IMG/VR virus record: IMGVR_UViG_3300035181_000357
Location: 62,001-126,000 of that record
Length of the DNA stretch: 64,000 bases
Strand: one strand, 5' to 3'
Both the position numbers and the translations under genes were made by a program. The notes below the pieces were generated by a model. It searched no databases. It was given only the letters and a program-made list of their open reading frames with translations, and had not been told where the DNA came from. Positions 43,634 through 61,571 of this stretch are shown one piece after another; the stretch's first letter is position 1, and the number at the start of each line of letters is the position of its first letter.

Positions 43634-45547
43634 TTACGAAAGCTCACATGTTCCTGAACTACAAGCAAGTTCCCTTGCTGGTTCGGTATGATCCTCAGCT
43701 TCATAGATGAACAACTTACTGAAGTCGATTACAGGCAGTTCAGATGCCAACTTTTCATACATAGCGTCGTTGATCTCTTCATATGGAGCCTGTTCATAAA
43801 CATGATCAGATGCTGGTAAGAAACTGATACCATTTACATTATCAAAGTTTCTGTAAACCCAAGCACCAACCTCTAACCACTCTTCATCCTTAACATAGAT
43901 GGTGATGGATGGATTATGTTCTGCCCAGAAGTTGTTGTAGATAGCATACAACTCCAGTTGATCAACAGCAGACTTCGAACCCTTGAATACAGCACCATCA
44001 GGGGATTTGATTGGGAAGCTGAATACGACAGTATTTGGACTCACCTTGTCCACCTCATGGGGGATTCCACTGTCAATCAAGAGTTGAGTCAGGGGATCTT
44101 TCTTATCACCACGAACTCGTCTGATATACTTTGGTGCCCAACGATCATGAATACCAGAAGCTGACCCAACTAGCTGTGAACTATTTCCCTCTGGCTTCAC
44201 ACAAGTGATCGCAGCAGCAGGATTGATTCCGAGTGCTTCAGCATACACCTTATTAATCTCAACGGCGTACTGTCTGGCTACTTCTAAGAAATCTGAGAGT
44301 TCTTTTGAAGGGGTTGACATGAACTTGTTGTCACAGATCCCATTGAGACTTACACCAAGGAGTCTCTCTTCCTCACACTTCTTCTTCCAGGACTTTCTTA
44401 GATACTTGAAATCAGTGAGGGTAGATTGAAGAGTACCGATGATGGTTGCAATTCTGATCTTCTTTAGGATGGATTCCTTGGTGTCTTCAGATCTTAGGAT
44501 TACAGAACTAAGGTTACAGAACTCACCACCACCATCACCAGAAGCTAGAAGAATTTCTCCACATGGATTCGTCCCGAATTCCTGGTCTGGGTCACGACGG
44601 CCATACTTCTTAGCTTTCTTGACTGCAGCTACTCTGTTGAAGATACCACGTTCTCCAGAACGAGACTCGATGAGGGAAGTGAATTCCTTCAAGAAGATAT
44701 CCATTGTTGGACGCTCAGTGTAAACAGCAGAGTTATTAGCAAACGATCTATTTGGCTTCTCTACGTACCATTGACCAGTCTTAGCACTTCTCATACGATC
44801 ATCAGATAGATTTGATAGAGAGATAAGAGCTGCTCTACGGACACCACCAGCAACAGTACAAGCCGATATATTACATACGAGATCGTGACACTCTAAGGAA
44901 TTTAACTTCCTACCAGCAGCTTTCTGGAACAGAGCAACACAGTAGTGGAATAACTTGTCGAGAGGCTCTGGACCAGATGCTCTTCCTCCGAAGGTCTTCA
45001 AGATAGAACCAGCAGGACGAACCTCAGTAGTATCCCAACTTGGGATTCTACCAGCGTATAGGAGAGAAATTAGTTCCTGGAAAGCAACACACCAACCAAG
45101 TCTGGAATCCTTAACCTTAATAACAATGTCAGTAGGGAAGAATTCTTCAGAGATTACAGGAAGTTTGTTGACATACTGTCGCTCACAACTAAATCCGACA
45201 CCAGTTCCGTGCATGTTGATATACATGATCTCACTGAACACACGAGGATCATCAATAGCTGTATACGAACAGTTGTAACCACCGATGTGAGCCTTTTCTA
45301 ATGCTTTACCTGCAGTCATCAGTGAACGCATACTTGGCATAACATTCATCGTTGTTATATTATTTCTAAGTTCTTCACGAATCTCTTCGCGAGAAAGGCC
45401 TTCTGCTTGCTCAGGAATCTTATCAGAAAAGAATTCAACGTACCTATCTACTGTTTCTTCCCAGGTCTCACGTCTCTTTTTCTTATCATTCCAACGAGCA
45501 TATCGGCTCTGATGAATATATGTTTGGTATTGTGACAAAGAATTCAT
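43634..45547 (-). CDS. nrdJ: Class II (B12-dependent) ribonucleotide reductase
   Basis: RRETW, MPSMR, YNCS, GVRRAA, TNPCGEI, CNL, TCVKPEG, C-terminal ACSSGTC; no beta-subunit gene adjacent. Confidence 0.9.
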   Translation of the reverse strand: MNSLSQYQTYIHQSRYARWNDKKKRRETWEETVDRYVEFFSDKIPEQAEGLSREEIREELRNNITTMNVMPSMRSLMTAGKALEKAHIGGYNCSYTAIDDPRVFSEIMYINMHGTGVGFSCERQYVNKLPVISEEFFPTDIVIKVKDSRLGWCVAFQELISLLYAGRIPSWDTTEVRPAGSILKTFGGRASGPEPLDKLFHYCVALFQKAAGRKLNSLECHDLVCNISACTVAGGVRRAALISLSNLSDDRMRSAKTGQWYVEKPNRSFANNSAVYTERPTMDIFLKEFTSLIESRSGERGIFNRVAAVKKAKKYGRRDPDQEFGTNPCGEILLASGDGGGEFCNLSSVILRSEDTKESILKKIRIATIIGTLQSTLTDFKYLRKSWKKKCEEERLLGVSLNGICDNKFMSTPSKELSDFLEVARQYAVEINKVYAEALGINPAAAITCVKPEGNSSQLVGSASGIHDRWAPKYIRRVRGDKKDPLTQLLIDSGIPHEVDKVSPNTVVFSFPIKSPDGAVFKGSKSAVDQLELYAIYNNFWAEHNPSITIYVKDEEWLEVGAWVYRNFDNVNGISFLPASDHVYEQAPYEEINDAMYEKLASELPVIDFSKLFIYEAEDHTEPARELACSSGTCELS

Positions 45548-45705: not shown

Positions 45706-46617
45706 CTACTGCAGTTCTTCAGAAATATCATACGTTTCTGGGACAGAATCTTGAACCCTTATCTCTTCCAACTCTACTCTCTGGAGTAATGAAATACCAG
45801 AAGTATCTGAATTTGCACTTGAATCAAAAATTTGATCGATGATCCTTTTCTCTTCTCTTATAAAAGATGTCTCCATCAAAACCGGATCATCCTCTAAGAA
45901 GGATAGAGCTCTTAGACCACATCGCAGACTGTGATACTTCTTGTCATCACCACAACAGGTTTCTAACTCTTCCATGAAACCTTCTGCATCCTCTTTTGTC
46001 TTAGCTAGGAAAGTCATCCCAACCTTTCTACCATCCTCTATAATCTTATACTTTAACCACGACGTATCCATCGTAGTTATCCTTTGGGATTCCAGGATCT
46101 CAAACTGTTCCCTGATTCTTTCTCTTATAATATCTGAAGTGGAATGCATATACATCTCAGATGGGATAGGAGGATTCTTTGCCTGAACTTTCTTCAATTG
46201 GAGAATCAAAGAATATGTGTCTACCAGAGTTGGATCTTGATCTTTTGGTAAATTCTTTATCTCGAAAGAGAGTCTTGATTCCAACTCTTCCCTTGTCAAG
46301 AACAATAGAAGCATATCTCTTCGAAGTCTTGCATTAGGAAAGTCATACAAGTCATTAAATCTAGAGACTAGCTTATCTCTAACATCTTCTAGAGTTTTCT
46401 TTAGAAGACTACTATTTTTCAGTAGTAATTTTCGTCTATAGATTAGGTCATTTACTTTTGGAAATACGACATCTCGATAGTGAAGAGCTACACATTGAAG
46501 TGTTGTCTCTTTTATCTCTTTGCCTGAATCTAACCTAAATCTCAAACCAAACCTCTTCCTACTTAATACGGGATTAAGTATGACCTGTAGTACAAATTTA
46601 ATCGATTCAAACCTCAC
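45706..46617 (-). CDS. Orphan protein directly downstream of the structured RNA; candidate partner of the TnpB-like locus
   Basis: 303 aa, basic N-half, acidic C-terminus; no confident family. Confidence 0.55.
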   Translation of the reverse strand: MRFESIKFVLQVILNPVLSRKRFGLRFRLDSGKEIKETTLQCVALHYRDVVFPKVNDLIYRRKLLLKNSSLLKKTLEDVRDKLVSRFNDLYDFPNARLRRDMLLLFLTREELESRLSFEIKNLPKDQDPTLVDTYSLILQLKKVQAKNPPIPSEMYMHSTSDIIRERIREQFEILESQRITTMDTSWLKYKIIEDGRKVGMTFLAKTKEDAEGFMEELETCCGDDKKYHSLRCGLRALSFLEDDPVLMETSFIREEKRIIDQIFDSSANSDTSGISLLQRVELEEIRVQDSVPETYDISEELQ

Positions 46618-46626
46618 AATTTTAAA

Positions 46627-46846
46627 CTCTGAAGACCAGAGATTGCCTAGTATGCACCCAAGAGATAAGTCTCGGGGTTATTGATCAAACCCAGCTGGCT
46701 CACATACGTGGCCACTGTAAAGCCGCAGCAGCTTGGGAAAGAATCAACGATACAGACTTGTTGATTCCAACCACCTCCTTAGATACCACTCTTGGATATC
46801 CTCAGTTTGTTTAACTGAAACTTTGAATAAAGGAGACTCAATAACC
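46627..46846 (-). ncRNA. Multi-stem structured RNA (about 220 nt)
   Basis: Nested helices: 46676-84/46838-46, 46775-80/46830-35, 46741-48/46760-67, 46690-96/46730-37 plus small hairpins; G-U pairs favour minus strand. Confidence 0.65.
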
Positions 46847-46857
46847 AAATGGATCGT

Positions 46858-46877
46858 TTATTATGATTATTGTTATT
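46858..46877 (-). repeat. 20-nt exact copy of 48246-48265 (candidate guide)
   Basis: TTATTATGATTATTGTTATT on + strand at both positions. Confidence 0.95.
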
Positions 46878-46965
46878 TTCTTTCGACGTTGCGTTTGGGA
46901 CAAAGTCCTCAGCAGAACCAAGGATGAGTAGAGGGAGGCACCTTAGGTGCTTCTAATTCTGCATA
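46878..46965 (-). ncRNA. Candidate omegaRNA-like scaffold overlapping the 3' end of the TnpB-like gene
   Basis: GCAGAATTAG/TTGGTTCTGC stem enclosing GCACC-TAA-GGTGC, then GGAC-TTT-GTCC, then the 20-nt repeat. Confidence 0.45.
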
Positions 46966-48075
46966 TCCTAGTTCCATACACGAAGAAGCTAGAACCTGAC
47001 TTCTAAGCCTGTTCTTTCCTCTTCGTTTTGAGATGATACCAGTATCCTGGATAATCTTAAACGCGATAGCACCTTCCGCCTGTCGCGATCTCCCAATCCT
47101 TTTGATGATCATATCGATATCGTCAAGATTGTTCTTAGTGTCTTTCTTATGTTTACTAAGGAAGACGAATCTACAATTCTTAGAAATCTCTTTAAAAAGA
47201 GAATTAAGATACTTGTAGTGGTTCTTTCGAACCCTATCTGCTTTGACACTGATCTCTAATTCCTTACCGGTATCGAGGCTCAGAACCTTTATACTTAGAT
47301 GATCGTTGTCAGCAGCAATACCAATATCTAAGGAACCAGAAGGTGTAGTATCAGTTGCTTCGACGGATTTCAAGACCATATAATAATATCTGTGATCTCG
47401 TCTTACAACCTTTATACTCTTAACATCTGCCTTTTTAATACTGGATGGTATGGTTACAGAAGTTTTTAATTTCTGTAACCTGGTTTCTAGTTCTTTTATC
47501 AGGTTCTTGGTCTTGGTCTCATATCTACTAAATGTGATATGGATAGGATCTTCATCCTCTTCATAATCCCAAGACATCTTACTCAATCTCGAGGTCTCTA
47601 ATTCAGTCTTCGATTTCAATTCCATGCTAATCTTACTAAGTTTATTCTGTAAGATTCGTCTCGTTTTCCCAGTGGCTACATCAGAACGTTCCTGGTTTCG
47701 CTTCATTTCATAGCGTCTCTTGTTTTCGATTCGCTTCAGATTCAGATATTCGGTTTCAAGTTTCGTGTTCAGAGTTTTTAGTCTTTTGTCTGTTTTCGGT
47801 CGCAGGTGTCGTTGGGTGAGTTTACGTTTACGTTGGTAGTCTTTCAGGCATATCTCGACGATCTCTCTATCCCGTACTAACATGGAGGCTACATCTATGC
47901 ATAGCGCATTGGGTTCAGAAGAAAAAGATTCGGGGGTTAGGTTCTGGATTCGGCCACCAGAAGCGTCTATACCCACTAGACAATTCCACACCATTCTGTA
48001 GATCAAGAACTGCTGACCATAGTCGCCAGTTCTAACAAATGATCTTCTTACAACAGATGACATGAACAATCTCAC
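46909..48075 (-). CDS. Probable nuclease-dead TnpB/Cas12f-derived protein
   Basis: 388 aa, very basic; RMVWN helix, KSIKVVRRDHRYYYMV, DIGIAA..LSLDTGK, HYKYLNSLFKEISKNCRFVFLS, RSQVLASSCMELG..EAP occur in TnpB order with RuvC D/E/D apparently replaced. Confidence 0.5.
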   Translation of the reverse strand: MRLFMSSVVRRSFVRTGDYGQQFLIYRMVWNCLVGIDASGGRIQNLTPESFSSEPNALCIDVASMLVRDREIVEICLKDYQRKRKLTQRHLRPKTDKRLKTLNTKLETEYLNLKRIENKRRYEMKRNQERSDVATGKTRRILQNKLSKISMELKSKTELETSRLSKMSWDYEEDEDPIHITFSRYETKTKNLIKELETRLQKLKTSVTIPSSIKKADVKSIKVVRRDHRYYYMVLKSVEATDTTPSGSLDIGIAADNDHLSIKVLSLDTGKELEISVKADRVRKNHYKYLNSLFKEISKNCRFVFLSKHKKDTKNNLDDIDMIIKRIGRSRQAEGAIAFKIIQDTGIISKRRGKNRLRSQVLASSCMELGYAELEAPKVPPSTHPWFC

Positions 48076-48137
48076 AAGTTAGGAACTGATACACTCAAGG
48101 TCAAGTAAATTCTTAATTCTACAAGAAGTTATCGATA

Positions 48138-48412
48138 TCCTGTATAGTAAGAACAACAAGGATGACCGTAACCTGTAACAACCTGTATTCTTAATAATTA
48201 TAATAGATAACTGATAATAAGTAACAATTATAACTTATAATGATGTTATTATGATTATTGTTATTAGGAATTAAGGACATGTTGTACACCTGTATCTAAT
48301 TGTTGTTGTAGCTGACAGGTTGTGTTCTCAATTTTGGACAATTTATACTTTCTGAATCATGTTTTTAAAGTCTCTCTATTACCAGGTACTTAAGAACACT
48401 TCATACACAGGT
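48138..48412. promoter_or_regulatory. Divergent control region and candidate replication origin
   Basis: Only strand switch in the window; about 80-nt AT-rich core 48187-48266; ACCTGT at 48171, 48181, 48288 and inverted ACAGGT at 48315, 48407. Confidence 0.55.
48246..48265. repeat. 20-nt exact copy of 46858-46877 (candidate target)
   Basis: Identical 20-mer, same orientation. Confidence 0.95.
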
Positions 48413-48458
48413 ATAAAATTAGGATTTAGAACTTGTCACCTTATTGAAGAGGTGACCT

Positions 48459-48929
48459 ATGTGGTTTGTATCGATCCTAAATTTCATGAAGCCAAAGATG
48501 CCTGAGTTCATTAAGAAAGCTTTCTTTGAAGATGATGGTAAGACTGTTTCGAGTTCCCGACTTATGGGAGGTCTGACCTTCGCTGTCCTACACTTCTGTA
48601 ACGTGACCTTGGTCGGAGCTATTTCGTGGGGGATCTGGTCGGTGATCAAGATTCATCCTATTGACAATATGGCTCTCACTTCTTTACTAGGTTCCATAAA
48701 GTACCTAGCTCTGTTATACCTAATCTTGGCTGCAACTGCTCTAGCCTTGTATGGTATCAACATCTGGAAGTATGTGTCTGCCATCAAGAATGGTTTGAAT
48801 AATGACGTCGATGGTTTAGAGGAAGAAGTGACTAAGACTTCTACCCAGGTTGAATCTACAAAGACTGTGACAACTCCTACCAAAGCTCCTGAAGTTCAGG
48901 TAGAGAAACCAACAAAAGACGATTTGTAG
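48459..48929 (+). CDS. Holin-like membrane protein
   Basis: SSSRLMG followed by two hydrophobic helices and a charged tail. Confidence 0.55.
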   Translation: MWFVSILNFMKPKMPEFIKKAFFEDDGKTVSSSRLMGGLTFAVLHFCNVTLVGAISWGIWSVIKIHPIDNMALTSLLGSIKYLALLYLILAATALALYGINIWKYVSAIKNGLNNDVDGLEEEVTKTSTQVESTKTVTTPTKAPEVQVEKPTKDDL

Positions 48930-48959
48930 ACCTATCAACCTTATTAATTAAGGTGACAG

Positions 48960-49424
48960 ATGGCTATTGCCAGAAAACGTGATGACAATCTTATCGAAAT
49001 CCTGATAGGGAAAGATCTATATGTTTTTAAATCTCTGTCTTGGTTGGATGAGATGGTTGTTAAAGAAGTTGATGGTATTTCCAGAGAACGTCAGTTGATG
49101 GCTAGAGCAACCATATCTGTCTCAAACAACCTGACCTTCACTTATGAAGAGAAACTGAAACTGATGAGAGCTATCCCACTCGCTATCTTTAAAAGAGTGT
49201 ATACTATCTATAAGGCTTTAGAGGCTGATGGTAGAAGACCATTTAAAACCATCCACTTATATATTGCACCAGAAGTCACTAAAGTCTTGGGAAAGATCAA
49301 GATGGAAGACGAGGATATGGAAGAGACTCTGAATGCTGTCTTTGGAGACGATGAGGCTGAGGTCCGAGAAACTGAGGAACTAATTCTTAAGAATTCTGGG
49401 TTGAAGGGAGCCACAAAAATCTAA
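48960..49424 (+). CDS. Probable tail assembly protein
   Basis: Upstream of tape measure; context only. Confidence 0.45.
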   Translation: MAIARKRDDNLIEILIGKDLYVFKSLSWLDEMVVKEVDGISRERQLMARATISVSNNLTFTYEEKLKLMRAIPLAIFKRVYTIYKALEADGRRPFKTIHLYIAPEVTKVLGKIKMEDEDMEETLNAVFGDDEAEVRETEELILKNSGLKGATKI

Positions 49425-50482
49425 TGGCTACTGCTGGTACTCAATTAATGGAGAAGATTAACAGTGGAGAGATTCAAACTGTTAAATCAGGTGTAACCAA
49501 GAAGATAAGACAAGATGTATCATCTGTCTTCGAAGAGATACTGGGAGTAGGAGCGAGAATTCGTCCTATCCTCTTAGATGGGTCTAGGATAGGGTGGATT
49601 CGTGGCCTTAGTGTTAACGAGAGAAAGTTGCTGGCCTCTTGGTTTAATGATCAGAATGAGTTAATAACTCAAGCTCTAGTATACTCTACATCGTTATCGA
49701 AAGAAGATATAGTTAATCTAAACTCATATGAATTTAGATCCTTGTTAAGACTAGCCAACATAATGAGCACAGCAGATGTCAGCCTGTACCCATACCTAGT
49801 TCCATATACTTCCACATCTAGTTCAGATGATTTGTGGCGAGCCTGTGGTTGTATAGTTCCTCAGTTCCTGAATAAAGATATAACTATGCCAGATAGTAAA
49901 ACTATACGAATACTGTGTAACTCTGATCATAGTAGATTCTGGGCAAGTCTATGCAGCAAAAGGGACCAAGCCTCTTCTGAATTATCCGGGAATTATGATG
50001 CAGCTATGGTAGCTGGTGCTATGGTGGGTAAGAGTGTTCAGAAGTATATAACTAATCTAAATAAGAGAGCCTTGTTGTTAGAGATAAATTCTGATAATCC
50101 ATGGAAGAACATCTCTACAATAGACCAGGCAGATTCCCTAGATCTGAATGATGGATGGGGCCACGCACATGAGGATTCGTCGGAAGCTGGCCTCTTAAGA
50201 GAAGGTGAAGGTATGGTTGGGTTTGATAAACACGAACAATTCATGGAAACATTCTACGATCAGTATATGAATAGGCAGCAAAAGAAGACTGAAATAACTA
50301 AAAGAACCGAACAAGGGTTAATAGATGAGGTATCATCTATTATGACTGAAAAAGAAGTACAAGCTAGAGAACGAGATGTAGATAAAGAAAGTTCTAGAAT
50401 AAGACAGATGGCAGTAGATGAAGCTTCTAGTGCCTCAGATCGTATGGAACAAAAAGATAACATGACTTTCATTGTAGACTAA
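49424..50482 (+). CDS. Probable tail assembly protein
   Basis: TAATG-coupled; context. Confidence 0.45.
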   Translation: MATAGTQLMEKINSGEIQTVKSGVTKKIRQDVSSVFEEILGVGARIRPILLDGSRIGWIRGLSVNERKLLASWFNDQNELITQALVYSTSLSKEDIVNLNSYEFRSLLRLANIMSTADVSLYPYLVPYTSTSSSDDLWRACGCIVPQFLNKDITMPDSKTIRILCNSDHSRFWASLCSKRDQASSELSGNYDAAMVAGAMVGKSVQKYITNLNKRALLLEINSDNPWKNISTIDQADSLDLNDGWGHAHEDSSEAGLLREGEGMVGFDKHEQFMETFYDQYMNRQQKKTEITKRTEQGLIDEVSSIMTEKEVQARERDVDKESSRIRQMAVDEASSASDRMEQKDNMTFIVD

Positions 50483-50492
50483 AGGAAATTAA

Positions 50493-51065
50493 ATGGAAAC
50501 TACACCACTAAGAACGTTAGACGATATAATCAATGATCTTCAAGGTTTTGGTATAGCCGAATCTGAGGACATAATCTCCTTAAATGTAAATAACAGAACT
50601 GTACAACTTAGAATTAAGAATCTCCCAACAGAGGAAGAGATCAATTCTCTTCTAGCTGCAGAAGAGTTTAAAGGGCATATGTGGGTCCAGAGAATCCGAG
50701 CTGAGATCCTGTCCAGATCCATATCTTGGATGAATGGAGTGGTGGTCACAGGAACTGAATACGTAGCACACCCTCTCCGTGATAAGATATCTGTAAACAT
50801 AAGAGTGGCTTTACGAGATGTTCTCTTAACTTGGGGTGTTGAGACTATCTCAATTCTCTGGAAGATCCTGATGGTCCATAACCAAAAGATCGAAGATAAT
50901 CTTATCGAATCATTCCCTGATACAGTCATAATGACTAATTTCGAGCAGAGATTCTTCCAACAGACTATGAAGGAATTGGAAGAAGCCCATAGAGGCGTAC
51001 TGGATGCTGTAGTGTCAGACACCTTAGTAGACACTATCGATGATCTCAAGAAGGGTGATCAATAA
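50493..51065 (+). CDS. Tail assembly chaperone-like protein
   Basis: Immediately before tape measure; LRIKNLPTEEE, EILSRSISWMNG. Confidence 0.5.
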   Translation: METTPLRTLDDIINDLQGFGIAESEDIISLNVNNRTVQLRIKNLPTEEEINSLLAAEEFKGHMWVQRIRAEILSRSISWMNGVVVTGTEYVAHPLRDKISVNIRVALRDVLLTWGVETISILWKILMVHNQKIEDNLIESFPDTVIMTNFEQRFFQQTMKELEEAHRGVLDAVVSDTLVDTIDDLKKGDQ

Positions 51066-51124
51066 ATAACAGGAACGAGATTCTATGCCTCTGTAATGCA
51101 GAGGCATATTAATAGAGGTTTAGA

Positions 51125-54370
<3,246 letters not shown>

Positions 54371-55987
54371 ATGGCCACAAAATCTGTAAAGACGAGCGAT
54401 CTAGATATTTATATAACAGAAGCCTGTAAGACAGGTGCTAAAGAAGTAACAGCTAAAGTCTTAAAAGCAACTCTGTCTGGTGAACAGAATTTATCTGGGA
54501 GTAATGTAGTATATAATCCTGCCTCCAACAGTTCTGGGGCCTGGGGCCTCGCCCAGATGAAGGATCAGGCACTATTATCCTGTGGTCCTAGAGTTCTAGG
54601 GTATGGTCCTAAAGAGAATCCACCAGAACAGACCTATATGGATGCTCTTCATAAAGCTGCAGCAGAACCAAAGACTGCTATAAAGTTAATGAAAGCATAT
54701 TTAGATGCTGAGATTCCTGGTATAAAAGGATCTTTAAAAGGTGTTAAGTATGATAGTAACGATATAGGAGCTATCGTAGCTGGATCATACAATCTCGGTG
54801 CCTCAGAGAATAAAAAGGCTATCCTAGCGTCTATAGCTAATGGTAGATTTAATAAAGATGCATATTACCAAAATTACTATAACACCCTAAATCCAGCTGA
54901 TAGAAGTCAATCGAATGTTAACAGAGTTAGAAAAGCTGGAGGAGATTTACCAACCAACGTCCCTTATACAGCTAAAGCTACTAATCTCATGGAGATAGAA
55001 AAGGGGAGAGCTGCAAATTATATAGCTAATGTAGATTTTCTATCAGATACTGTGTCTAATGGTGCATTATCAGAGATGCCTTCTTTAATAATCGAAGAGG
55101 GACTAGACAGTAAACCATGGTATGATGATAGAGAGTTGACAACAGGTAATAGAAACCTTAAACTAATATCAACACCAGCCTGGTTTGAGATAAATCTAAA
55201 ACAAGATATAAAAAGTAGTAATAGGTTAAAGTATAACAATGATGTAGTTAAGGTTAAGCTTAATGTAAGTTTATCAGAAGTACAGGTCTCTCTCGCTCAT
55301 GTTATAAACAATAGACACTCTAGAACTGGATTCCATGTAACATTATGGGGGCAGGAACCAGATACTATATCTGCTTCTGGATCAACGGGTGTCTTTATGA
55401 ATTTCTTTGGTCTCGCGAACTTGATGAGTGAGGAGGGAGTTATGAATAGGTCTGAATTAGAGGATGCTTTTTTATACGATTCAGACAATAACAAAAATCC
55501 AGCAAATAAAGCAAATAAAGGTGTGTACCAGAGAACAGTATCTCTAGAAAACCAACCTCTTAGGATAGCTGCTCAGGAGGCATTTATAGAGATGTTAAGC
55601 CTGTTTAAGAATAATGGAATCACAAGATTTCACCCTGAAATAGTGAATAGAATATATCCACAGAATAAGCAGGGAAATGGTGGTGTGGTTAGTGGGGAAG
55701 CCTCTAGAACATCTGCTAAAGAACCTATGAATCCCTGGTCAAAAGCAATAGGTATGTCTTTCACCCAAGCAACCAACAGATCCAATGATGTCATGACCAG
55801 GGGATACGTAGTATTTAAGTATAAGAACAAGACGTACCTTGGATACTTTAAAGATATAAATTTTGAAATGGATTCCAATAATCCGTTCCGTTGGAATTTC
55901 AATTTCACATTTCAGGTAGAGAGATCTCTGTCTACTACATTCTTTTTACCAAACCTCAGCAGCGGGTTTGATAGTAATTTTGGATAA
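54371..55987 (+). CDS. Lytic-transglycosylase-like N-domain fused to tube-initiator/hub-like C-domain
   Basis: SGEQN, GAWGLAQM, AGSYNLG; C-terminal TYLGYF...PFRWNFNFTF. Confidence 0.65.
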   Translation: MATKSVKTSDLDIYITEACKTGAKEVTAKVLKATLSGEQNLSGSNVVYNPASNSSGAWGLAQMKDQALLSCGPRVLGYGPKENPPEQTYMDALHKAAAEPKTAIKLMKAYLDAEIPGIKGSLKGVKYDSNDIGAIVAGSYNLGASENKKAILASIANGRFNKDAYYQNYYNTLNPADRSQSNVNRVRKAGGDLPTNVPYTAKATNLMEIEKGRAANYIANVDFLSDTVSNGALSEMPSLIIEEGLDSKPWYDDRELTTGNRNLKLISTPAWFEINLKQDIKSSNRLKYNNDVVKVKLNVSLSEVQVSLAHVINNRHSRTGFHVTLWGQEPDTISASGSTGVFMNFFGLANLMSEEGVMNRSELEDAFLYDSDNNKNPANKANKGVYQRTVSLENQPLRIAAQEAFIEMLSLFKNNGITRFHPEIVNRIYPQNKQGNGGVVSGEASRTSAKEPMNPWSKAIGMSFTQATNRSNDVMTRGYVVFKYKNKTYLGYFKDINFEMDSNNPFRWNFNFTFQVERSLSTTFFLPNLSSGFDSNFG

Positions 55988-55990
55988 CTT

Positions 55991-57001
55991 ATGTTAAGCC
56001 ATGATCAAGATACCAGAAATATCATAAATTCTATGGATTCGTTGGAGAATATAAACATTCTACCAACTAGAGGAGAGAATAAAATTCTCCCACTAGCCAT
56101 AGATAAATCTGTATTTCCAACTACAATCTCAGGAGCAGCAGGAATACCTCCAGACTTTAATTTTAGAGATTCTTTAGATGAGTTAGACTTCGCCTCTTCT
56201 AAAGCAAGAATAACCCTTACAGATTATATAACCATAAAGGTTAATAATAGAAAAGCAGCAAACGGGGATCCTTTCGTCTTTAGATTTTTAATAAATCCTG
56301 AATCTCTAAATATAAACAGGTCATCAGTGGATGGGCAAACCATGACTCGAGCTGGGTGGCAATTTGGTGTCTGGGGAGAGGACTTCATAAAGATTAGTGG
56401 TAAAGGAACGACAGCTGGGCAATACTTTGCTAGAACCCTAACTGATGGATATGGGGAATACACCTTGTCTTATAGAAATCTCCTGGCGTTCATGACTCTG
56501 TTTGAGAACAATGGGTATTGGTTTGAGGGAGAAAGTCCTTTCGATAATGGTCCTCTTGCCTCTGATCTCCTGAGAAGGAGAATAAAGAAGCATTCTGATG
56601 TAGTGTTCTCAGTTGGAAATTTCATATGGAATGGGATGTTTCAAAGTTTAACTGTCTCAGATACTGCAGATACACCATATTTCAATACTTTCAGTTTCAA
56701 TTTTATAGCCTGGAAAGAGCGATATAGAGGTAGTAGTCCTTGGTTAGACAGTACAGAATCAAATCTATATCGGGGACACGCATACGAAGCAGGATATAAG
56801 AATAAGAGTATATCTGAGTCTGGTGGTAGTCAGCAAGGGAATGTATTAAACAATGCCGTAGATTCTACACCAAGTTCACTATCATCTAGTAGTAACCAAA
56901 CATCTTATGGATTATCTGGAACAGATCAAAAGATAACTCTGGGGCAACTTCAAACACCACCCCTTTTAGATATCACAAGACAACTTAATGGTGGGAAATG
57001 A
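55991..57001 (+). CDS. Tube-initiator/baseplate centre protein
   Basis: FLINPESL, WGEDFIKISGKGTT, WNGMFQSLTV...PYFNTFSFNF; paralogous to the preceding C-domain. Confidence 0.6.
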   Translation: MLSHDQDTRNIINSMDSLENINILPTRGENKILPLAIDKSVFPTTISGAAGIPPDFNFRDSLDELDFASSKARITLTDYITIKVNNRKAANGDPFVFRFLINPESLNINRSSVDGQTMTRAGWQFGVWGEDFIKISGKGTTAGQYFARTLTDGYGEYTLSYRNLLAFMTLFENNGYWFEGESPFDNGPLASDLLRRRIKKHSDVVFSVGNFIWNGMFQSLTVSDTADTPYFNTFSFNFIAWKERYRGSSPWLDSTESNLYRGHAYEAGYKNKSISESGGSQQGNVLNNAVDSTPSSLSSSSNQTSYGLSGTDQKITLGQLQTPPLLDITRQLNGGK

Positions 57002-59322
57002 CTAATATAAGAAATATATCACAAACCCATATGGAACGGGATATTGTTAAGACAGCTCCAGATATGGTTGTATATATAGATGATTATCCTTTTATAGAAA
57101 ATCCATATATAGGGGACTCTGGTACATCTGTAAACTTCAATGACTTCATAACTACAATCACAGGCCATTGTGATTGTGATTCCCTTATTCCAACAGCCAG
57201 TATTGTTCTATCAGTTCCTAATCATTTTAATTATCTGTTTCTAGCTCCTGGTGGAAACAAGATTCTGGCTACAATGTCAATAATCAAAATATTCTCGAAA
57301 GGATATTATTTTGATGATGATGGGAATACAGTGTATCACAGAGTATTCTATGGCTTAATAGATTCTGTTGGATATTCATACACTGGAACTACTCTACAAA
57401 TAACGATAGGATGTAAGGGTATAATGCGTTTGTTTGAACTTATTCAGACAAATGTGGCCCCAGGTGCAGCAAACTTCGCCGTATTAGCTGGTAAATCATA
57501 TTTAGTACCATTCAGAACTAAAGATTATGATAAATCTGCCTTAGCAATCATATATAAGAGTATATTTAGAGATCTAAATGCAGATGAGATTGCAGGAGCA
57601 CTTCCTGATGTTACTCTCCAGAGGAGTATATCAACAAACGCTTTGGATACTAGAATGACCAATAGTACACTCGTTTCTATGGTGAAGAATAGATACATCT
57701 TAAGATGGGCCCCTGTGATGTCTGAGATAAAAGCTGCCACCAGAATATTTGGTTGGGATTATGAGCTTGAGAAGAGGGATAAGAAGACAAAGGAATTATC
57801 TAATCTTCCAGATGCAAAAGAAATGGCTGAAGCATCTTTTATTCATCAAACCGATTCAGTGTCTAAATACCTACCAGATTATGCGATTGGAAATATCACG
57901 CTTCTACAATCTAAAATTGTAACAAAATTAGAGAGAATATCATCAATGTCTGGTGTGATTGGGTATGAAGCATATCAAGATCTAAATGGTAATATCATAT
58001 TTAAGCCACCTCTCTATAATCTAGATGTTACTAACACTACAGCAATAGATGAATCTAAGAATCCTTTCATTATAAATCTTGATGAGATCATAGATGAGAG
58101 TGAACAAGAAGATGAACAAGCTATCCGAGCCACGAGAGTAACTGTGAAGGGGCAACCTTGGGGTGCTCTCCTCCAAGAGAGTTATAATCAGAGTATATTA
58201 CCTGGTGTGTCGTCATACACCGATATGAATCTGTTTGCTAAATTTGGTATGAGAGAAGAACCAATCAAAGAGATATCCTGGCTAAAGGAAGACAACAGAG
58301 TCAACTATGCCTATGCCATCTCTGAAATGTTTAGAATGAATAGAGCATATAGAACCTACAGATTCTCTATTCCTATGAGACCTGAAATGAAGGTTGGGTT
58401 CCCTTGTTATATCAAACATCATGATATGTATGGGTACACAAGAAACATATCCTGGAGTTACACGGTTGGTGGAACAGCAACAATGAGCGTAACCTTGGAC
58501 TCTCTAAGAAGAAGAGTGTTGGTTCCAATAGAGGTTAAGAATTCTGATGGTACAACTGTAACTGAGTATAAGAGCATTCCAAATCTAGTATCTAAGTTCT
58601 CAAAGAAAGCTAAGAAGCCTAAAGAAAATGTATCCCCAACTGAAGCTGCGGTAGATGAGCGTGGGAAGGTCCTAGCTTATGGTACTGGTAAAGATTCTAA
58701 GAAAGTACCAGATTCTCAGGCAGAGATCGTGATAGATGATAGGAATCATAATGATTATGAGGATCTTATCGTAGTACAGACAAGAGTCCCAGATAGCGGA
58801 GAGTCCTGGCTTATTGGTGAGGATGAAGATAATTTCTTCGTACACGAGAGAAAATGTGATACTACATATCTCAAGGCTTTGAGTGACAAACAACCATTCA
58901 CTGATAATAATGGGTATGAATTATATGGGCCCTTCCCATGGGGACGTTGGGTTACACTAGAATCTGCAATAGGAATATTTACTCTATCGTTGACAGAGCA
59001 GAAGAATAACAATACTGAATCCTGGATCGTATCAGATGCTGTTAGTTTGAGTATGATACTTCTAGGTTCCTTCAATCCAGATATTGCAAATCTAAAAGGT
59101 GAAATAGCTAAGAAGACAGAAGAAGATATAAAGAAGTTATCAGGGTATAACGTAACTAAATTCACTATCAATGCTTCTAAATATGATTCGCAGGACAATA
59201 AAGATGGTCCTAAGTCACTAAATCCTGATGGTCCATCTTTCATCCCTAAAACCGAAAATAGAGATGTATATAAAGAACCATTGAATACCATTAAAAACAC
59301 ATTTATATGGCCTAAACTATGA
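56998..59322 (+). CDS. Baseplate hub protein
   Basis: YEAYQDLNGNIIFKPPLY, IPMRPEMKVGFP; position. Confidence 0.65.
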   Translation: MTNIRNISQTHMERDIVKTAPDMVVYIDDYPFIENPYIGDSGTSVNFNDFITTITGHCDCDSLIPTASIVLSVPNHFNYLFLAPGGNKILATMSIIKIFSKGYYFDDDGNTVYHRVFYGLIDSVGYSYTGTTLQITIGCKGIMRLFELIQTNVAPGAANFAVLAGKSYLVPFRTKDYDKSALAIIYKSIFRDLNADEIAGALPDVTLQRSISTNALDTRMTNSTLVSMVKNRYILRWAPVMSEIKAATRIFGWDYELEKRDKKTKELSNLPDAKEMAEASFIHQTDSVSKYLPDYAIGNITLLQSKIVTKLERISSMSGVIGYEAYQDLNGNIIFKPPLYNLDVTNTTAIDESKNPFIINLDEIIDESEQEDEQAIRATRVTVKGQPWGALLQESYNQSILPGVSSYTDMNLFAKFGMREEPIKEISWLKEDNRVNYAYAISEMFRMNRAYRTYRFSIPMRPEMKVGFPCYIKHHDMYGYTRNISWSYTVGGTATMSVTLDSLRRRVLVPIEVKNSDGTTVTEYKSIPNLVSKFSKKAKKPKENVSPTEAAVDERGKVLAYGTGKDSKKVPDSQAEIVIDDRNHNDYEDLIVVQTRVPDSGESWLIGEDEDNFFVHERKCDTTYLKALSDKQPFTDNNGYELYGPFPWGRWVTLESAIGIFTLSLTEQKNNNTESWIVSDAVSLSMILLGSFNPDIANLKGEIAKKTEEDIKKLSGYNVTKFTINASKYDSQDNKDGPKSLNPDGPSFIPKTENRDVYKEPLNTIKNTFIWPKL

Positions 59323-61571
59323 AATTCATAAATCTATCACAACGATTATCCCCCTTAGAACACACTGTAGAAGATGTTCGTTATGGTATATTTATAGGTC
59401 AAGTCGAGTTCGTAGATTATGAAAAACAGATTCTAGCTGTGCGAGATATCACTACTGGAATCTTGTATGAGAGAGTAGAAGTTCAACCTGCTTCATCCAG
59501 TTCTACAGACCATACAGATACTACTATTCCTTTAGAGGGTTCTAAATGTATCTGTTGTAATATATCTGCTACCAATGGATTTATTAAGGTTGCTGTAATA
59601 CAGTGGCTCCTAACAGCTACAAAATTAGGGTTAAATGGAATCTCATATAGAGATTCTAACAATCCTAAGGGATATAATCTCAGAAGACGTTATATCTATA
59701 GAAAGGGATACCCAGGACAACATGTAGTCAGTTTATCTGGTGGATATGCCGAATTAGAAGACTTGGGCTGGGACAGACAAGGTGAAGACCTGTCTAGAGA
59801 CCATTTAGACACATTCAGAAGAGTCAGAACCCAGACAGCAGGAACGCATTTTCAGGTAGATGAATCCGGTCTACAGATAAGTGGAGAGATTCTAAGACCA
59901 GGTTCAGACATACCTACCAAAGTTCTACCAGATGGGACATTAATTCAGTCTCTACATCTTAAAACTGGGGACAGATTCGCTGATGGTTCAGCAATGAATA
60001 TCCCTGTGGTAGAGAGACTGGAGAGGACACAGGAGTATGGTCTAGGTTATCCAGTCCCACAGGAGGTTCTAGATTCAGCAGAGTTCTTAGGAGTCCTCGG
60101 GATCAATGAAGCACCATTCGCTAAGACATCTGTAGCTAACAACCTTGATGACCAGAGTTATGTGAATAACCAGGCAGTAGATGCTCCATATGACAACGAT
60201 GAGAAACCTCTCAGACCATTTGAAAAAGATGGCGTTTCGTATAGACGAAAAGGGTTCATTGTAGAATCTGTTAAAGGAACGTTAGTAGGATATAACGCTT
60301 TCGATAAATCTACATATGGCCAAATCCTAAAACCTACGTTATTCCCACACACCCAAGCTGGTAGATTCTCAACATCTCTTGAATCTGGGTATCTACCTGT
60401 CAACAAGTCAGCCGATGAAGTAGAGTCTGTCTTAGCATCTAGTGCATTTAGTCTAAGATTCCCATACGAGTACAATACAACCAGATTCGATATCACAAAA
60501 GAGGGTATGGTCCAATTCGAAATAGGATCCACACTTCCTAAAGAGAATATCCCAATTGATTCCTCTACATATGAACACCCTCACGGTGCAGGTCGTTCTA
60601 TGGAGGGGCACTTCCTAGGTTCGGTTAAACTCGTCGTAGGAAAGAACAGAGATGAAGAAGAGTCGCTCGACATCGCGACACTAGGACAAGTAGTACTCCG
60701 CCTAGGTTCTGATGACACTAGTCTCCCACAAACACGTAGAGATGTGCATACCCAGATTAGATCAAAGATGGATTCTATTCTAGGCCGTGACCTACAATTC
60801 TGGAAGAAGCCAAAGAACGACAAGACAGGAGATGCTGGAAGCCTGGAAAATAAATCTGCGTTTGAAAAAGTTAGTCTCCGTGGTGCATTTGATGGTGGTA
60901 CTATTCTTCGTCTAGGTGCTAGAGATCCTGGAGCATTAAGAAAGCATCTCCGAAATGGTTATACTGACGCTAAGGGTGTTACAGAGTCTCCAAACGACGA
61001 GAATAGAAAAGATTCTAGAACTGATGGTCGTGTAACCTATGGATCAGGAGATAGCCTTTATGCTTTCCATGATCTGACACAGGCAGGTAAATCTAAGTAT
61101 AGTAAATCTCCATACTTCTGGTCGGATTCTCCAATAACTAATATGGACCGTCATGGTCTGTCCTTGGATGTTCATGCTGTAAGAGATATCTTACTCCGTA
61201 TTGGGAAGAATCCAGACTCTGGTCAATCCCTTGCTATCGATCTTGGTGGTGGTATGGTAGCATACCTCGGTAAAGATAAGCAAAGTAGATCGATCACAGC
61301 ATCATTAGATGGTGGTGCTGAGATAACCATCAAAGCAAACACAGATGGCCATGCTCTTCAACTAGAGATAGATGGCAATGTAAATATCTATTGTAAAGGC
61401 CATTGGCATCAGGTAGTTACAGGTGACTATTATGTAGAATCCAACAACTCAACTGCTATAACTAATATAGAACACATCGTTAAAGCTACTAATATCAGAG
61501 AATCTGCTGGTGTACAACATGTCACAGAAGCGATAGATATAGTAAATAATCAGGGATTATATAAGAGTTAA
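59319..61571 (+). CDS. Baseplate spike-like protein
   Basis: N-terminal OB-like IGQVEFVDYE...IPLEGS; C-terminal beta-helix-like repeats (IDGNVNI..KGHWHQVVTGDY). Confidence 0.55.
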   Translation: MKFINLSQRLSPLEHTVEDVRYGIFIGQVEFVDYEKQILAVRDITTGILYERVEVQPASSSSTDHTDTTIPLEGSKCICCNISATNGFIKVAVIQWLLTATKLGLNGISYRDSNNPKGYNLRRRYIYRKGYPGQHVVSLSGGYAELEDLGWDRQGEDLSRDHLDTFRRVRTQTAGTHFQVDESGLQISGEILRPGSDIPTKVLPDGTLIQSLHLKTGDRFADGSAMNIPVVERLERTQEYGLGYPVPQEVLDSAEFLGVLGINEAPFAKTSVANNLDDQSYVNNQAVDAPYDNDEKPLRPFEKDGVSYRRKGFIVESVKGTLVGYNAFDKSTYGQILKPTLFPHTQAGRFSTSLESGYLPVNKSADEVESVLASSAFSLRFPYEYNTTRFDITKEGMVQFEIGSTLPKENIPIDSSTYEHPHGAGRSMEGHFLGSVKLVVGKNRDEEESLDIATLGQVVLRLGSDDTSLPQTRRDVHTQIRSKMDSILGRDLQFWKKPKNDKTGDAGSLENKSAFEKVSLRGAFDGGTILRLGARDPGALRKHLRNGYTDAKGVTESPNDENRKDSRTDGRVTYGSGDSLYAFHDLTQAGKSKYSKSPYFWSDSPITNMDRHGLSLDVHAVRDILLRIGKNPDSGQSLAIDLGGGMVAYLGKDKQSRSITASLDGGAEITIKANTDGHALQLEIDGNVNIYCKGHWHQVVTGDYYVESNNSTAITNIEHIVKATNIRESAGVQHVTEAIDIVNNQGLYKS

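What the first reader, a model, noticed from the sequence alone, without database searches (positions are those of the whole stretch)
45706..48412. Candidate self-targeting RNA-guided system at the phage strand switch (dead TnpB, guide, second RNA, partner gene, target in putative origin)
Seen, in minus-strand order: AT-rich divergent region containing site X (48246-48265); basic 388-aa gene; hairpins overlapping its 3' end; exact 20-nt copy of X 31 nt after the stop; a 220-nt multi-stem RNA; an orphan 303-aa gene. Established: TnpB omegaRNAs overlap the ORF 3' end and carry a 3' guide, and nuclease-dead TnpB derivatives (TldR) act as RNA-guided repressors. Inference: the phage has domesticated a dead TnpB that binds its own divergent control region. 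It could autoregulate, switch early/late transcription or, most novel, open an R-loop in the AT-rich unwinding element to initiate replication. The downstream RNA could recruit the second protein. I see no transposase nearby.
Basis: partly seen in the sequence, partly recalled or inferred. Interest (0 to 1): 0.9.

Follow-up and report, generated by a model that had tools for sequence, protein, structure and literature searches.

The report
Phage dead TnpB-like protein, self-matching guide
A 210-kb uncultured phage carries a nuclease-dead relative of the TnpB/Cas12f RNA-guided enzymes, and its 20-base guide exactly matches a site just upstream of its own gene; this match changes in step across seven related phages, so it looks like a virus regulating itself by RNA-guided DNA binding.

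Summary
The 20-nt sequence occurs exactly twice in the window. One copy lies in the AT-rich divergent region (48246-48265). The other lies 31 nt after the stop of the basic gene (46858-46877).

Six related metagenomic phage loci have the same layout. In each, the two copies are identical to each other over 20-25 nt. Five different sequences occur among the seven loci, so guide and target co-vary.

No sequence profile recognises the protein. A model of its shortest homologue gives only Cas12f, TnpB and dCas12f as top PDB matches, and viral TnpB-type "transposases" in BFVD. By motif alignment the second and third RuvC catalytic positions are not acidic in the window protein, and its zinc ribbon is lost.

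The guide sits 3' of covariation-supported stems that overlap the 3' end of the gene, as in TnpB and TldR. A TTCYY-like motif flanks the target in 6 of 7 loci. Directly 3' of the guide is a separate, strongly covarying RNA of about 235 nt, followed by a conserved acidic gene with no detectable relatives.

Best reading: a TldR-like RNA-guided DNA binder acting on the phage's own control region. Whether it represses, activates or primes replication is unresolved.

The parts
48246..48265 (-). Target site X: a 20-nt exact copy of the guide, in the AT-rich divergent intergenic region. No consensus RNA structure was found around it.
48266..48270 (-). Candidate TAM (TTCCT) directly 5' of X on the gene-A sense strand. 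The consensus is T(T/C)C(C/T)(T/C) in 6 of 7 loci and it is absent 5' of the guide copy.
   Evidence: The TAM function is inferred.
48284..48295 (-). Conserved block upstream of the TAM: ATACAATGGTAT-like (ATAC/GTAT inverted repeat) in most loci, ATACAGGTGTAC in the window. Possibly a protein-binding site.
   Evidence: Function unknown.
48197..48227 (-). Sigma-70-like leftward promoter candidate (TTGTTA-16-TATTAT, overlapping TATAAT). A TATAAT lies 34-49 nt after X in every locus.
   Evidence: This is a weak consensus match in AT-rich DNA, and the scan found no more such sites than in shuffles.
46909..48063 (-). Gene A: a basic 384-aa protein (the ORF extends to GTG 48075). Its family has a TnpB/Cas12f-like fold. 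By motif alignment, RuvC-I Asp is kept (D250), the RuvC-II and RuvC-III positions are Ser307 and Leu357, and the zinc ribbon is lost. A variable coiled-coil insert is present.
46898..47166 (-). Guide-RNA scaffold candidate overlapping the gene A 3' end. Three covarying stems lie at 47026-46898. Further nearly invariant predicted stems reach about 47166, where synonymous sites are unusually conserved.
46878..46897 (-). Conserved CCAAACGCA motif plus a variable purine-rich linker of 10-12 nt between the last scaffold hairpin and the guide.
46858..46877 (-). Guide: a 20-nt exact copy of X, 31 nt after the gene A stop.
46611..46846 (-). A structured RNA of about 235 nt directly 3' of the guide. 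A closing helix encloses two sub-domains, followed by two further stem-loops. It matches no Rfam family.
45706..46545 (-). Gene B: a conserved acidic 279-aa protein (the ORF extends to 46617), always next in line in the 7 loci. No family, structure or phage-isolate match.

Best explanation
Gene A encodes a vertically inherited, nuclease-dead descendant of a TnpB/Cas12f-type RNA-guided protein.

Proposed mechanism:
1. Its guide RNA is made from the 3' end of its own gene: structured scaffold, short linker, then a 20-nt guide.
2. The ribonucleoprotein recognises the TTCYY-flanked site X in the phage's divergent control region. It forms an R-loop there and does not cut.
3. X lies 34-49 bp upstream of a conserved TATAAT, in the orientation TAM, target, gene A. 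Binding would therefore control the leftward promoter that drives gene A, the guide, the 235-nt RNA, gene B, ribonucleotide reductase and gyrase B. This is an autoregulatory loop at the strand switch.

I favour repression by occupancy, as in TldR or lambda Cro (a shut-off or feedback device), because it needs nothing beyond binding. RNA-guided activation, as in the dCas12f-sigmaE systems that target their own upstream region, is the live alternative. In that case gene B and/or the 235-nt RNA would be cofactors.

Shown here: the repeat and its co-variation, both RNA structures, the fold class of the family, and synteny. Inferred: loss of catalysis (motif alignment only), the TAM, binding, and any effect on transcription.
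For: Guide-target identity of 20-25 nt in 7 of 7 syntenic loci, with 5 distinct sequences. The matches are far above composition-matched shuffles. The scans returned only these two copies in the window and the source contig and no other near-match in the window.

Fold: the top PDB matches are Cas12f, TnpB, Cas12g and dCas12f. The top BFVD matches are TnpB-type transposases. There is a faint TIGR01766 TnpB-related match at the expected place. The secondary-structure order is beta-hairpin, b1(DIG)-b2-b3-a-b4-a-(Zn ribbon)-a.

The RuvC-II and RuvC-III positions are not conserved acidic residues, and RuvC-I is Asn in P0006.

The scaffold stems covary. A covariance model built from 5 loci finds the two most distant loci independently, at E = 3e-8 and 5e-4.

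There is no consensus RNA structure around X, so X is the DNA target and not a second guide.

A TAM-like flank occurs at the target only.

Precedents: the TldR guide RNA is encoded downstream of tldR, with a scaffold of about 100 nt and a 3' guide (PMC10705468). dCas12f 'category III' loci have the target upstream of the locus and the guide RNA immediately downstream (PMC13472631).
Against: No sequence-level link to TnpB was found. Pfam, NCBIfam and PDB profile searches are negative, and hhalign against an InsQ-based mini-profile gives a probability below 1%.

The fold evidence rests on a medium-confidence model (pLDDT 65.5) of a distant homologue. TM-scores are only 0.23-0.32.

The window protein's own model (pLDDT 54) gives only generic RNase H-fold matches.

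The TAM motif is absent in L004.

The promoter assignments are consensus matches that are no more frequent than in shuffles, so the geometry argument is weak.

Canonical TnpB and Cas12f guide RNAs end at the guide. Here a large conserved RNA follows directly, and this model does not explain it.
Confidence: 0.6

Rival explanations
1. RNA-guided recruitment instead of repression. The gene A-guide complex marks X, and gene B and/or the 235-nt RNA bring in RNA polymerase (an RNA-specified promoter, as with dCas12f-sigmaE) or replication proteins (an R-loop in the AT-rich element acting as an origin).
For: The orientation TAM, X, gene A and the arrangement 'target upstream, guide downstream' match category III of PMC13472631. 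X lies upstream of the best -10 candidate and does not overlap it. The partner gene and the RNA are linked in 7 of 7 loci. The region next to X is 66-75% AT. Cumulative GC skew turns here.
Against: Gene B shows no sigma or any other signature. The GC-skew turn coincides with the switch in transcription strand, so it is not specific to an origin. The spacing from X to the start codon varies from 91 to 345 nt.
Confidence: 0.2
2. RNA-RNA antisense control. The single-stranded 20-25-nt segment between two structured RNA domains acts as a trans-acting small RNA. It pairs with a rightward transcript that reads through X. Gene A would be an RNA chaperone or unrelated.
For: Co-variation is explained equally well by this model. 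The best-scoring promoter-like site in the region is on the + strand (48175-48204, 10 of 12 matches) and would transcribe through X.
Against: The -35 hexamer of that + strand site is not conserved in the other loci. The conserved rightward promoter candidate (48390-48419) lies beyond X. This model leaves unexplained the TnpB-type fold of gene A, the TnpB-type placement of the guide, and the TAM-like flank.
Confidence: 0.1
3. The two copies are duplicate DNA signals (a promoter, operator or recombination core) read by a protein. They are kept identical by gene conversion or repeated duplication, and no RNA guide is involved.
For: The element is AT-rich and contains a -10-like CATAAT. One copy precedes gene A and the other precedes the 235-nt RNA and gene B.
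Against: A protein-read site does not need identity at all 20-25 positions with sharp borders. Conversion between 20-bp tracts in unrelated flanks is unlikely. The identity holds in 7 of 7 loci while the sequence drifts between loci. The scans returned only two copies in 210 kb.
Confidence: 0.05

Closest known systems
TldR (TnpB-like nuclease-dead repressors; fliC-, csrA- and oppF-associated clades)
   Same: A TnpB-type fold with a degraded RuvC site and loss of the zinc finger. The guide RNA is encoded at or after the 3' end of the gene with the guide at its 3' side. The target carries a 5' flanking motif near a promoter. There is no transposase, and some TldR clades are also phage-borne (PMC10705468, PMC13622181).
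   Different: Sequence profiles cannot detect it. It sits in the conserved core of large, apparently lytic phages and not in prophage cargo. It targets the phage's own control region and not a host gene. The match is 20-25 nt, against 9-16 nt in TldR. It has a coiled-coil insert. A 235-nt structured RNA and a conserved acidic gene follow the guide.
dCas12f-sigmaE RNA-guided transcription, category III (self-targeting loci)
   Same: A dead Cas12f/TnpB-fold protein with a target upstream of its own locus and the guide RNA immediately downstream. The target is oriented towards the gene. A conserved ncRNA is associated with guide-like sequence on the same strand (PMC13472631).
   Different: No sigma factor is recognisable here. 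The guide is longer. The flank is TTCYY-like, not 5'-G. The host is a phage genome and not Bacteroidota chromosomes. Here the ncRNA abuts the guide copy and not the target.
IscB/IsrB omega RNA
   Same: A guide placed at the 5' edge of a large multi-helix RNA that lies just upstream of a protein gene of about 280 aa.
   Different: Gene B has no RuvC, PLMP or bridge-helix signature. There is no Rfam HEARO match. The protein with the RNA-guided fold is gene A, which is of the TnpB type.
Lambda Cro and phi29 p4 (early regulators acting in a divergent control region)
   Same: The first gene of an early operon whose product acts on a site between divergent transcription units. This is an analogy of logic only.
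   Different: Those proteins read DNA directly. Here recognition would be by RNA-DNA pairing.

Membership tests
TnpB/Cas12f superfamily | Overall fold (WED/REC lobe plus a RuvC domain with a zinc ribbon) | tested here: met
   The P0006 model (pLDDT 65.5) has Cas12f, TnpB, Cas12g or dCas12f as its top 13 PDB matches, E 2e-7 to 1.2e-3. Its top BFVD matches are TnpB-type transposases, E down to 3e-9. Caveats: TM-scores are 0.23-0.32, and the window protein's own model is uninformative.
TnpB/Cas12f superfamily | Match to sequence profiles (Pfam OrfB_IS605 / OrfB_Zn_ribbon, NCBIfam TnpB models) | tested here: not met
   No Pfam, PHROG or PDB-sequence match. Only a sub-threshold TIGR01766 match, E = 0.12, in P0006. 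hhalign against InsQ and a 12-sequence TnpB profile gives a probability below 1%.
TnpB/Cas12f superfamily | Intact D-E-D RuvC triad | tested here: not met
   By motif alignment: position I is D250 (Asn in P0006). Position II is Ser307 (S/N/D/G across the family). At position III only P0006 keeps an Asp; the window protein has Leu357 there, two residues before the family-invariant Ser359. No structural superposition was available.
TnpB/Cas12f superfamily | Guide RNA scaffold overlapping the ORF 3' end with the guide on its 3' side | tested here: met
   Covarying stems lie at 47026-46898, followed by a linker and the 20-nt guide. The covariance model finds all 7 loci. No Rfam omega-RNA family matches.
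TnpB/Cas12f superfamily | Residence in an IS200/605 or IS607 element with TnpA | tested here: not met
   No transposase among the neighbours. The position is the same in 7 phage contigs, between the same flanking genes.
TldR | Two or more of the three RuvC residues mutated, often with zinc finger/C-terminal loss | tested here: met
   Positions II and III are lost in the window protein. The zinc ribbon is present only in P0006. This rests on motif-level alignment.
TldR | Guide matching a genomic site flanked by a TAM, at or near a promoter | tested here: inconclusive
   The match is proven. The TTCYY flank occurs in 6 of 7 loci. Promoter positions are consensus guesses only.
TldR | Represses transcription by RNA-guided occupancy | not testable with these tools
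   Needs ChIP-seq, RIP-seq and reporter assays.
dCas12f-sigmaE RNA-guided transcription | Genetically linked ECF sigma factor that the effector recruits | tested here: inconclusive
   Gene B is always linked but has no sigma or any other match.
dCas12f-sigmaE RNA-guided transcription | Target upstream of and oriented towards the regulated gene | tested here: met
   The order TAM, X, gene A holds in all loci, 91-345 nt before the start codon.
IscB/IsrB omega RNA system | Effector with an N-terminal RuvC-I, bridge helix and PLMP domain next to an RNA that carries the guide at its 5' end | tested here: not met
   The RNA geometry fits. Gene B lacks any such signature and there is no HEARO match.

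The most novel reading that the evidence does not exclude
The gene A-guide complex does not merely sit on X. Together with the acidic gene B protein and/or the 235-nt RNA that directly follows the guide, it recruits a polymerase to an otherwise signal-poor AT-rich site. The phage's early-to-middle transcription, or its replication start, would then be specified by an RNA-DNA match. This would be an RNA-programmed promoter or origin in a virus.
Probability: 0.2. Interest if true: 0.9.

Novelty: new variant of a known kind. Interest (0 to 1): 0.78.

Why it matters
RNA-guided transcription factors derived from TnpB and Cas12f were described only in 2023-2026. The clades characterised in the papers I read act on host or chromosomal genes.

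This would be a family that profile-based TnpB surveys are likely to miss, since no profile I tried detects it. It is fixed in the core genome of a clade of large phages and is aimed at the phage's own control region.

It offers:
- a natural case of viral self-regulation by RNA-DNA pairing;
- a compact (257-459 aa) and highly divergent scaffold;
- a long natural guide;
- two unexplained conserved partners, a 235-nt RNA and an acidic protein, which could reveal a new effector coupling.

The seven loci already supply natural 'reprogrammed' guide-target pairs, so the hypothesis is directly testable.

Tried and rejected
- **hhalign of the family alignment** against E. coli InsQ and against a 12-sequence TnpB profile built from viral contigs gave no significant hit.
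- **Homologue search with InsQ** was wasted. It returned only near-identical E. coli copies.
- **Re-search with the 7-sequence profile** found no new family members.
- **Collection scans.** The protein-pattern scan of IMG/VR returned only the source contig, and that of the metagenome contigs returned nothing. The RNA-pattern scans returned only the source contig and one chance hit, L151, which lies inside an unrelated ORF.
- **No cultured phage** carries gene A or gene B.
- **Reversed roles** (upstream copy as guide, downstream copy as target) were rejected. The 200 nt upstream of X have no consensus structure, 0 pairs.
- **Gene B as a paralogue of gene A** was rejected.
- **Gene B identity** was not found in the PDB, Pfam or NCBIfam.
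I computed the statistics in a script instead.
- **Synonymous-site test** was inconclusive for the three stems (0.51, against 0.44-0.51 elsewhere). It was raised (0.80) in codons 301-338, where further invariant stems are predicted.
- **Host inference from gyrase B** failed.
- **An internal promoter for the guide RNA** (47060-47033) exists only in the window sequence. Its -10 is not kept in the relatives.
Full report
**Setting.** The window is part of IMGVR_UViG_3300035181_000357, a 210.6-kb contig. It encodes a tail sheath, a major head protein, virion proteins, a DnaB-like helicase, another helicase, gyrase B and a ribonucleotide reductase. No deposited phage resembles it beyond short stretches of the ribonucleotide reductase gene. 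Transcription direction switches at 48076-48458. The minus-strand block begins with the two genes of the finding, followed by ribonucleotide reductase and gyrase B. The plus-strand block consists of unannotatable proteins.

The 20-mer AATAACAATAATCATAATAA (minus strand) occurs at 48246-48265 and 46858-46877, and nowhere else in the window at up to 3 mismatches. The collection scan returned one stretch of the source contig, holding just these two copies. No other near-match or seed match with a suitable flank exists in the window. The borders of identity are sharp, and the flanks are unrelated.

**Related loci and co-variation.** Homology searches found a very small family.
- Three relatives share 42-44% identity.
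- A profile search of 1.84 billion representative proteins added three distant ones: P0005, P0006 and P0007.
- All lie in the same place in large phage contigs: five leftward genes, the divergent gap, gene A, a non-coding stretch, gene B, then in six of the seven loci a ribonucleotide reductase, usually followed by gyrase B; L083 carries intein-containing genes at that position.

Every locus has an exact direct repeat, one copy upstream of gene A and one 31-60 nt after its stop. The repeat differs between loci:

| Locus | Repeat | Length (nt) |
|---|---|---|
| window, L001 | AATAACAATAATCATAATAA | 20 |
| L003 | AATAACAATAATCATAATAACA (the window 20-mer plus CA) | 22 |
| L004 | AATAATAATAATCATAATAAC | 21 |
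| L082 | AATAATAATAACAATAATAA | 20 |
| L083 | AATAATAACAATAATCACAAATAA | 24 |
| L084 | CTAATAATAATGATAATCATAACAA | 25 |

Composition-matched shuffles of the upstream region never give more than 12-15 nt of exact match. Two sites that stay identical to each other while drifting between genomes point to selection for complementarity. That means an RNA made from one copy recognises the other.

**Which copy is the guide.**
- The downstream copy is embedded in conserved, structured RNA.
- The 200 nt upstream of X give no consensus structure at all, 0 predicted pairs.
- 5' of the downstream copy, three stems overlap the last ~40 codons of gene A and end in a hairpin just after the stop.
- On five sequences, 84.5% of cells pair, against 39-44% when the partners are slid. 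10 of 39 pairs are compensatory.
- A covariance model built from those five sequences finds the two most distant loci on its own, at E = 3e-8 and 5e-4.
- On all seven loci, 22 of 39 pairs show compensatory change, against 8 or fewer when slid. That alignment is fitted to the model, so it leans towards the structure.
- Further upstream, to about 47166, more stems are predicted in sequence that is almost invariant. Synonymous sites there are unusually conserved, 0.80 against about 0.5 elsewhere.
- Between the last hairpin and the guide lie a conserved CCAAACGCA and a variable purine-rich linker.

This is the layout of TnpB and TldR guide RNAs, which have a scaffold over the ORF 3' end and the guide on the 3' side (PMC10705468).

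**The protein.**
- No Pfam, PHROG, NCBIfam or PDB-sequence match reaches significance.
- Profile-profile comparison with TnpB fails.
- A model of the window protein from four sequences is poor (pLDDT 54). It shows the order beta-hairpin, three strands beginning at the DIG motif, helix, strand, helix. Its Foldseek matches are only generic RNase H folds.
- A model of the shortest zinc-ribbon-bearing homologue, P0006, from seven sequences reaches pLDDT 65.5.
- Its top 13 PDB matches are all Cas12f, TnpB (ISFba1), Cas12g or dCas12f, with E from 2e-7 to 1.2e-3 and alignments of about 330-490 columns.
- Its top BFVD matches are TnpB-type 'transposases' of giant viruses and Campylobacter phages, with E down to 3e-9.
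- TM-scores are low (0.23-0.32), so this is a fold-class assignment and not a precise model.
- A faint TIGR01766 (TnpB-related) match falls on the expected strands.

In the family alignment the RuvC-I Asp is present in six of seven members and is Asn in P0006. The residue after strand 4 (RuvC-II) is S, N, D or G. At the start of the last helix, only P0006 keeps an Asp at the RuvC-III position. The window protein has Leu357 there, two residues before the family-invariant Ser359. Only P0006 keeps the CxxC...CxxxH ribbon. By the operational criterion used for TldR (two or more of the D-E-D residues lost), the window protein is nuclease-dead. This rests on motif alignment.

**The target.** On the gene-A sense strand, the five bases 5' of X read TTCCT, TTCCT, TCCCT, TTCTC, TTCTC and TTCCT in six loci. 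L004 differs. The guide copy is instead preceded by purines. This fits a 5' TAM that also spares the guide-encoding DNA. A TATAAT lies 34-49 nt after X in every locus, and a TTGTTA-16-TATTAT match lies at 48227-48200. In this AT-rich DNA such matches are no more frequent than in shuffles, so promoter positions remain guesses. The orientation TAM, X, gene A, with the guide immediately downstream of the gene, is the arrangement described as self-targeting 'category III' for dCas12f-sigmaE loci (PMC13472631).

**The extra parts.** Directly 3' of the guide lies an RNA of about 235 nt (46846-46611).
- A closing helix encloses two sub-domains, followed by two further stem-loops.
- It has 64 pairs with 94% of cells paired (35-46% when slid). 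28 pairs are compensatory, against 5 or fewer when slid and a shuffle maximum of 19.
- Folded as one 431-nt RNA from 47037 to 46607 (scaffold, guide and this RNA), the region has a z-score of -4.2 against shuffles.
- It matches no Rfam family.

Canonical TnpB and Cas12f guide RNAs end at the guide, so this RNA is unexplained. It could be released by trimming of a longer transcript, or it could be the leader of gene B. It could also be a cofactor. In the dCas12f systems, an ncRNA of unknown role has a 5' end that resembles the guide on the same strand.

Gene B is better conserved than gene A, at 45-63% identity. It is acidic (pI 5.2) and has no detectable relatives outside these loci. It is not a paralogue of gene A.

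**Interpretation.** The most economical reading is a TldR-like RNA-guided DNA-binding protein that acts on the phage's own divergent control region and so feeds back on its own operon. I lean to repression because it needs only binding. Three observations keep an activation or recruitment model open: X lies upstream of the best -10 candidate, the orientation points towards gene A, and two partners are conserved. An antisense RNA-RNA model explains the co-variation, but it does not explain the protein fold, the guide placement or the TAM-like flank. Duplicate protein-read signals do not explain identity at every one of 20-25 positions.

**Novelty.** The papers I found describe three characterised TldR clades (fliC-, csrA- and oppF-associated) and the Bacteroidota dCas12f-sigmaE systems. 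Searches for jumbo-phage or phage-genome dead TnpB found nothing like this. I rate it a new variant of a known kind.

Noticed in passing
window 46909-48075: The public gene call for this ORF is a 222-aa fragment (P0001) starting at an internal Met. Homologues show that the full ~384-aa protein is conserved from MSSVVRR (ATG 48063).
   Followed up: partly
window 47452-47480: A 13-bp inverted repeat (one mismatch; 3-nt spacer), GGTTACAGAAGTT/AATTTCTGTAACC, lies inside the variable coiled-coil part of gene A. It was scored as terminator-like on the + strand and was not reported in the other loci.
   Followed up: no
window 48284-48295; L003, L004, L082 and L084 at the equivalent place: An ATACAATGGTAT-like inverted repeat is conserved 15-25 nt upstream of the TAM-like motif. 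It could be the site of a conventional DNA-binding protein next to the RNA-guided target.
   Followed up: no
window 48390-48419 (+): TTAAGA-18-TAAAAT lies just before the first rightward gene. It overlaps blocks (CTTAAG, CAGGTAT) that are conserved in most of the seven loci, and it is the likely rightward promoter. X lies about 125 nt further from that gene.
   Followed up: partly
window 47050-47163: Synonymous sites of gene A codons 301-338 (the RQAEGAI...KIIQD region) are far more conserved (0.80) than elsewhere (about 0.5). The sequence is predicted to form stems, so there may be a joint protein and RNA constraint.
   Followed up: partly
window 46838-46846 versus 46866-46874: In the single-sequence fold, the 5' strand of the closing helix of the 235-nt RNA (GGUUAUUGA) pairs with part of the guide instead. 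This alternative pairing did not look conserved in L082.
   Followed up: partly
L003 10329-12972; L083 8302-12786; L084 10051-10824: The neighbouring replication genes are invaded in the relatives. There is an intein in gyrase B plus an inserted DUF7487 gene (L003), intein-containing genes at the position where the other loci carry the ribonucleotide reductase (L083), and a GIY-YIG/NUMOD3 homing endonuclease after the reductase (L084). The gene A module itself is never disrupted.
   Followed up: no
window 48459-61571 (+): A run of nine rightward genes (156 to 1081 aa) has no Pfam or PHROG match. The first five are conserved in order in the related loci. Their function is unknown.
   Followed up: no
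window 16723-18927: A 734-aa protein with an RNA ligase-like segment (phrog_755) lies among the structural genes.
   Followed up: no
window 43634-45547: The ribonucleotide reductase matches a phage PHROG strongly (E = 1e-163). It falls just below the Pfam cut-offs for the B12-dependent class II insertion and alpha domains.
   Followed up: no
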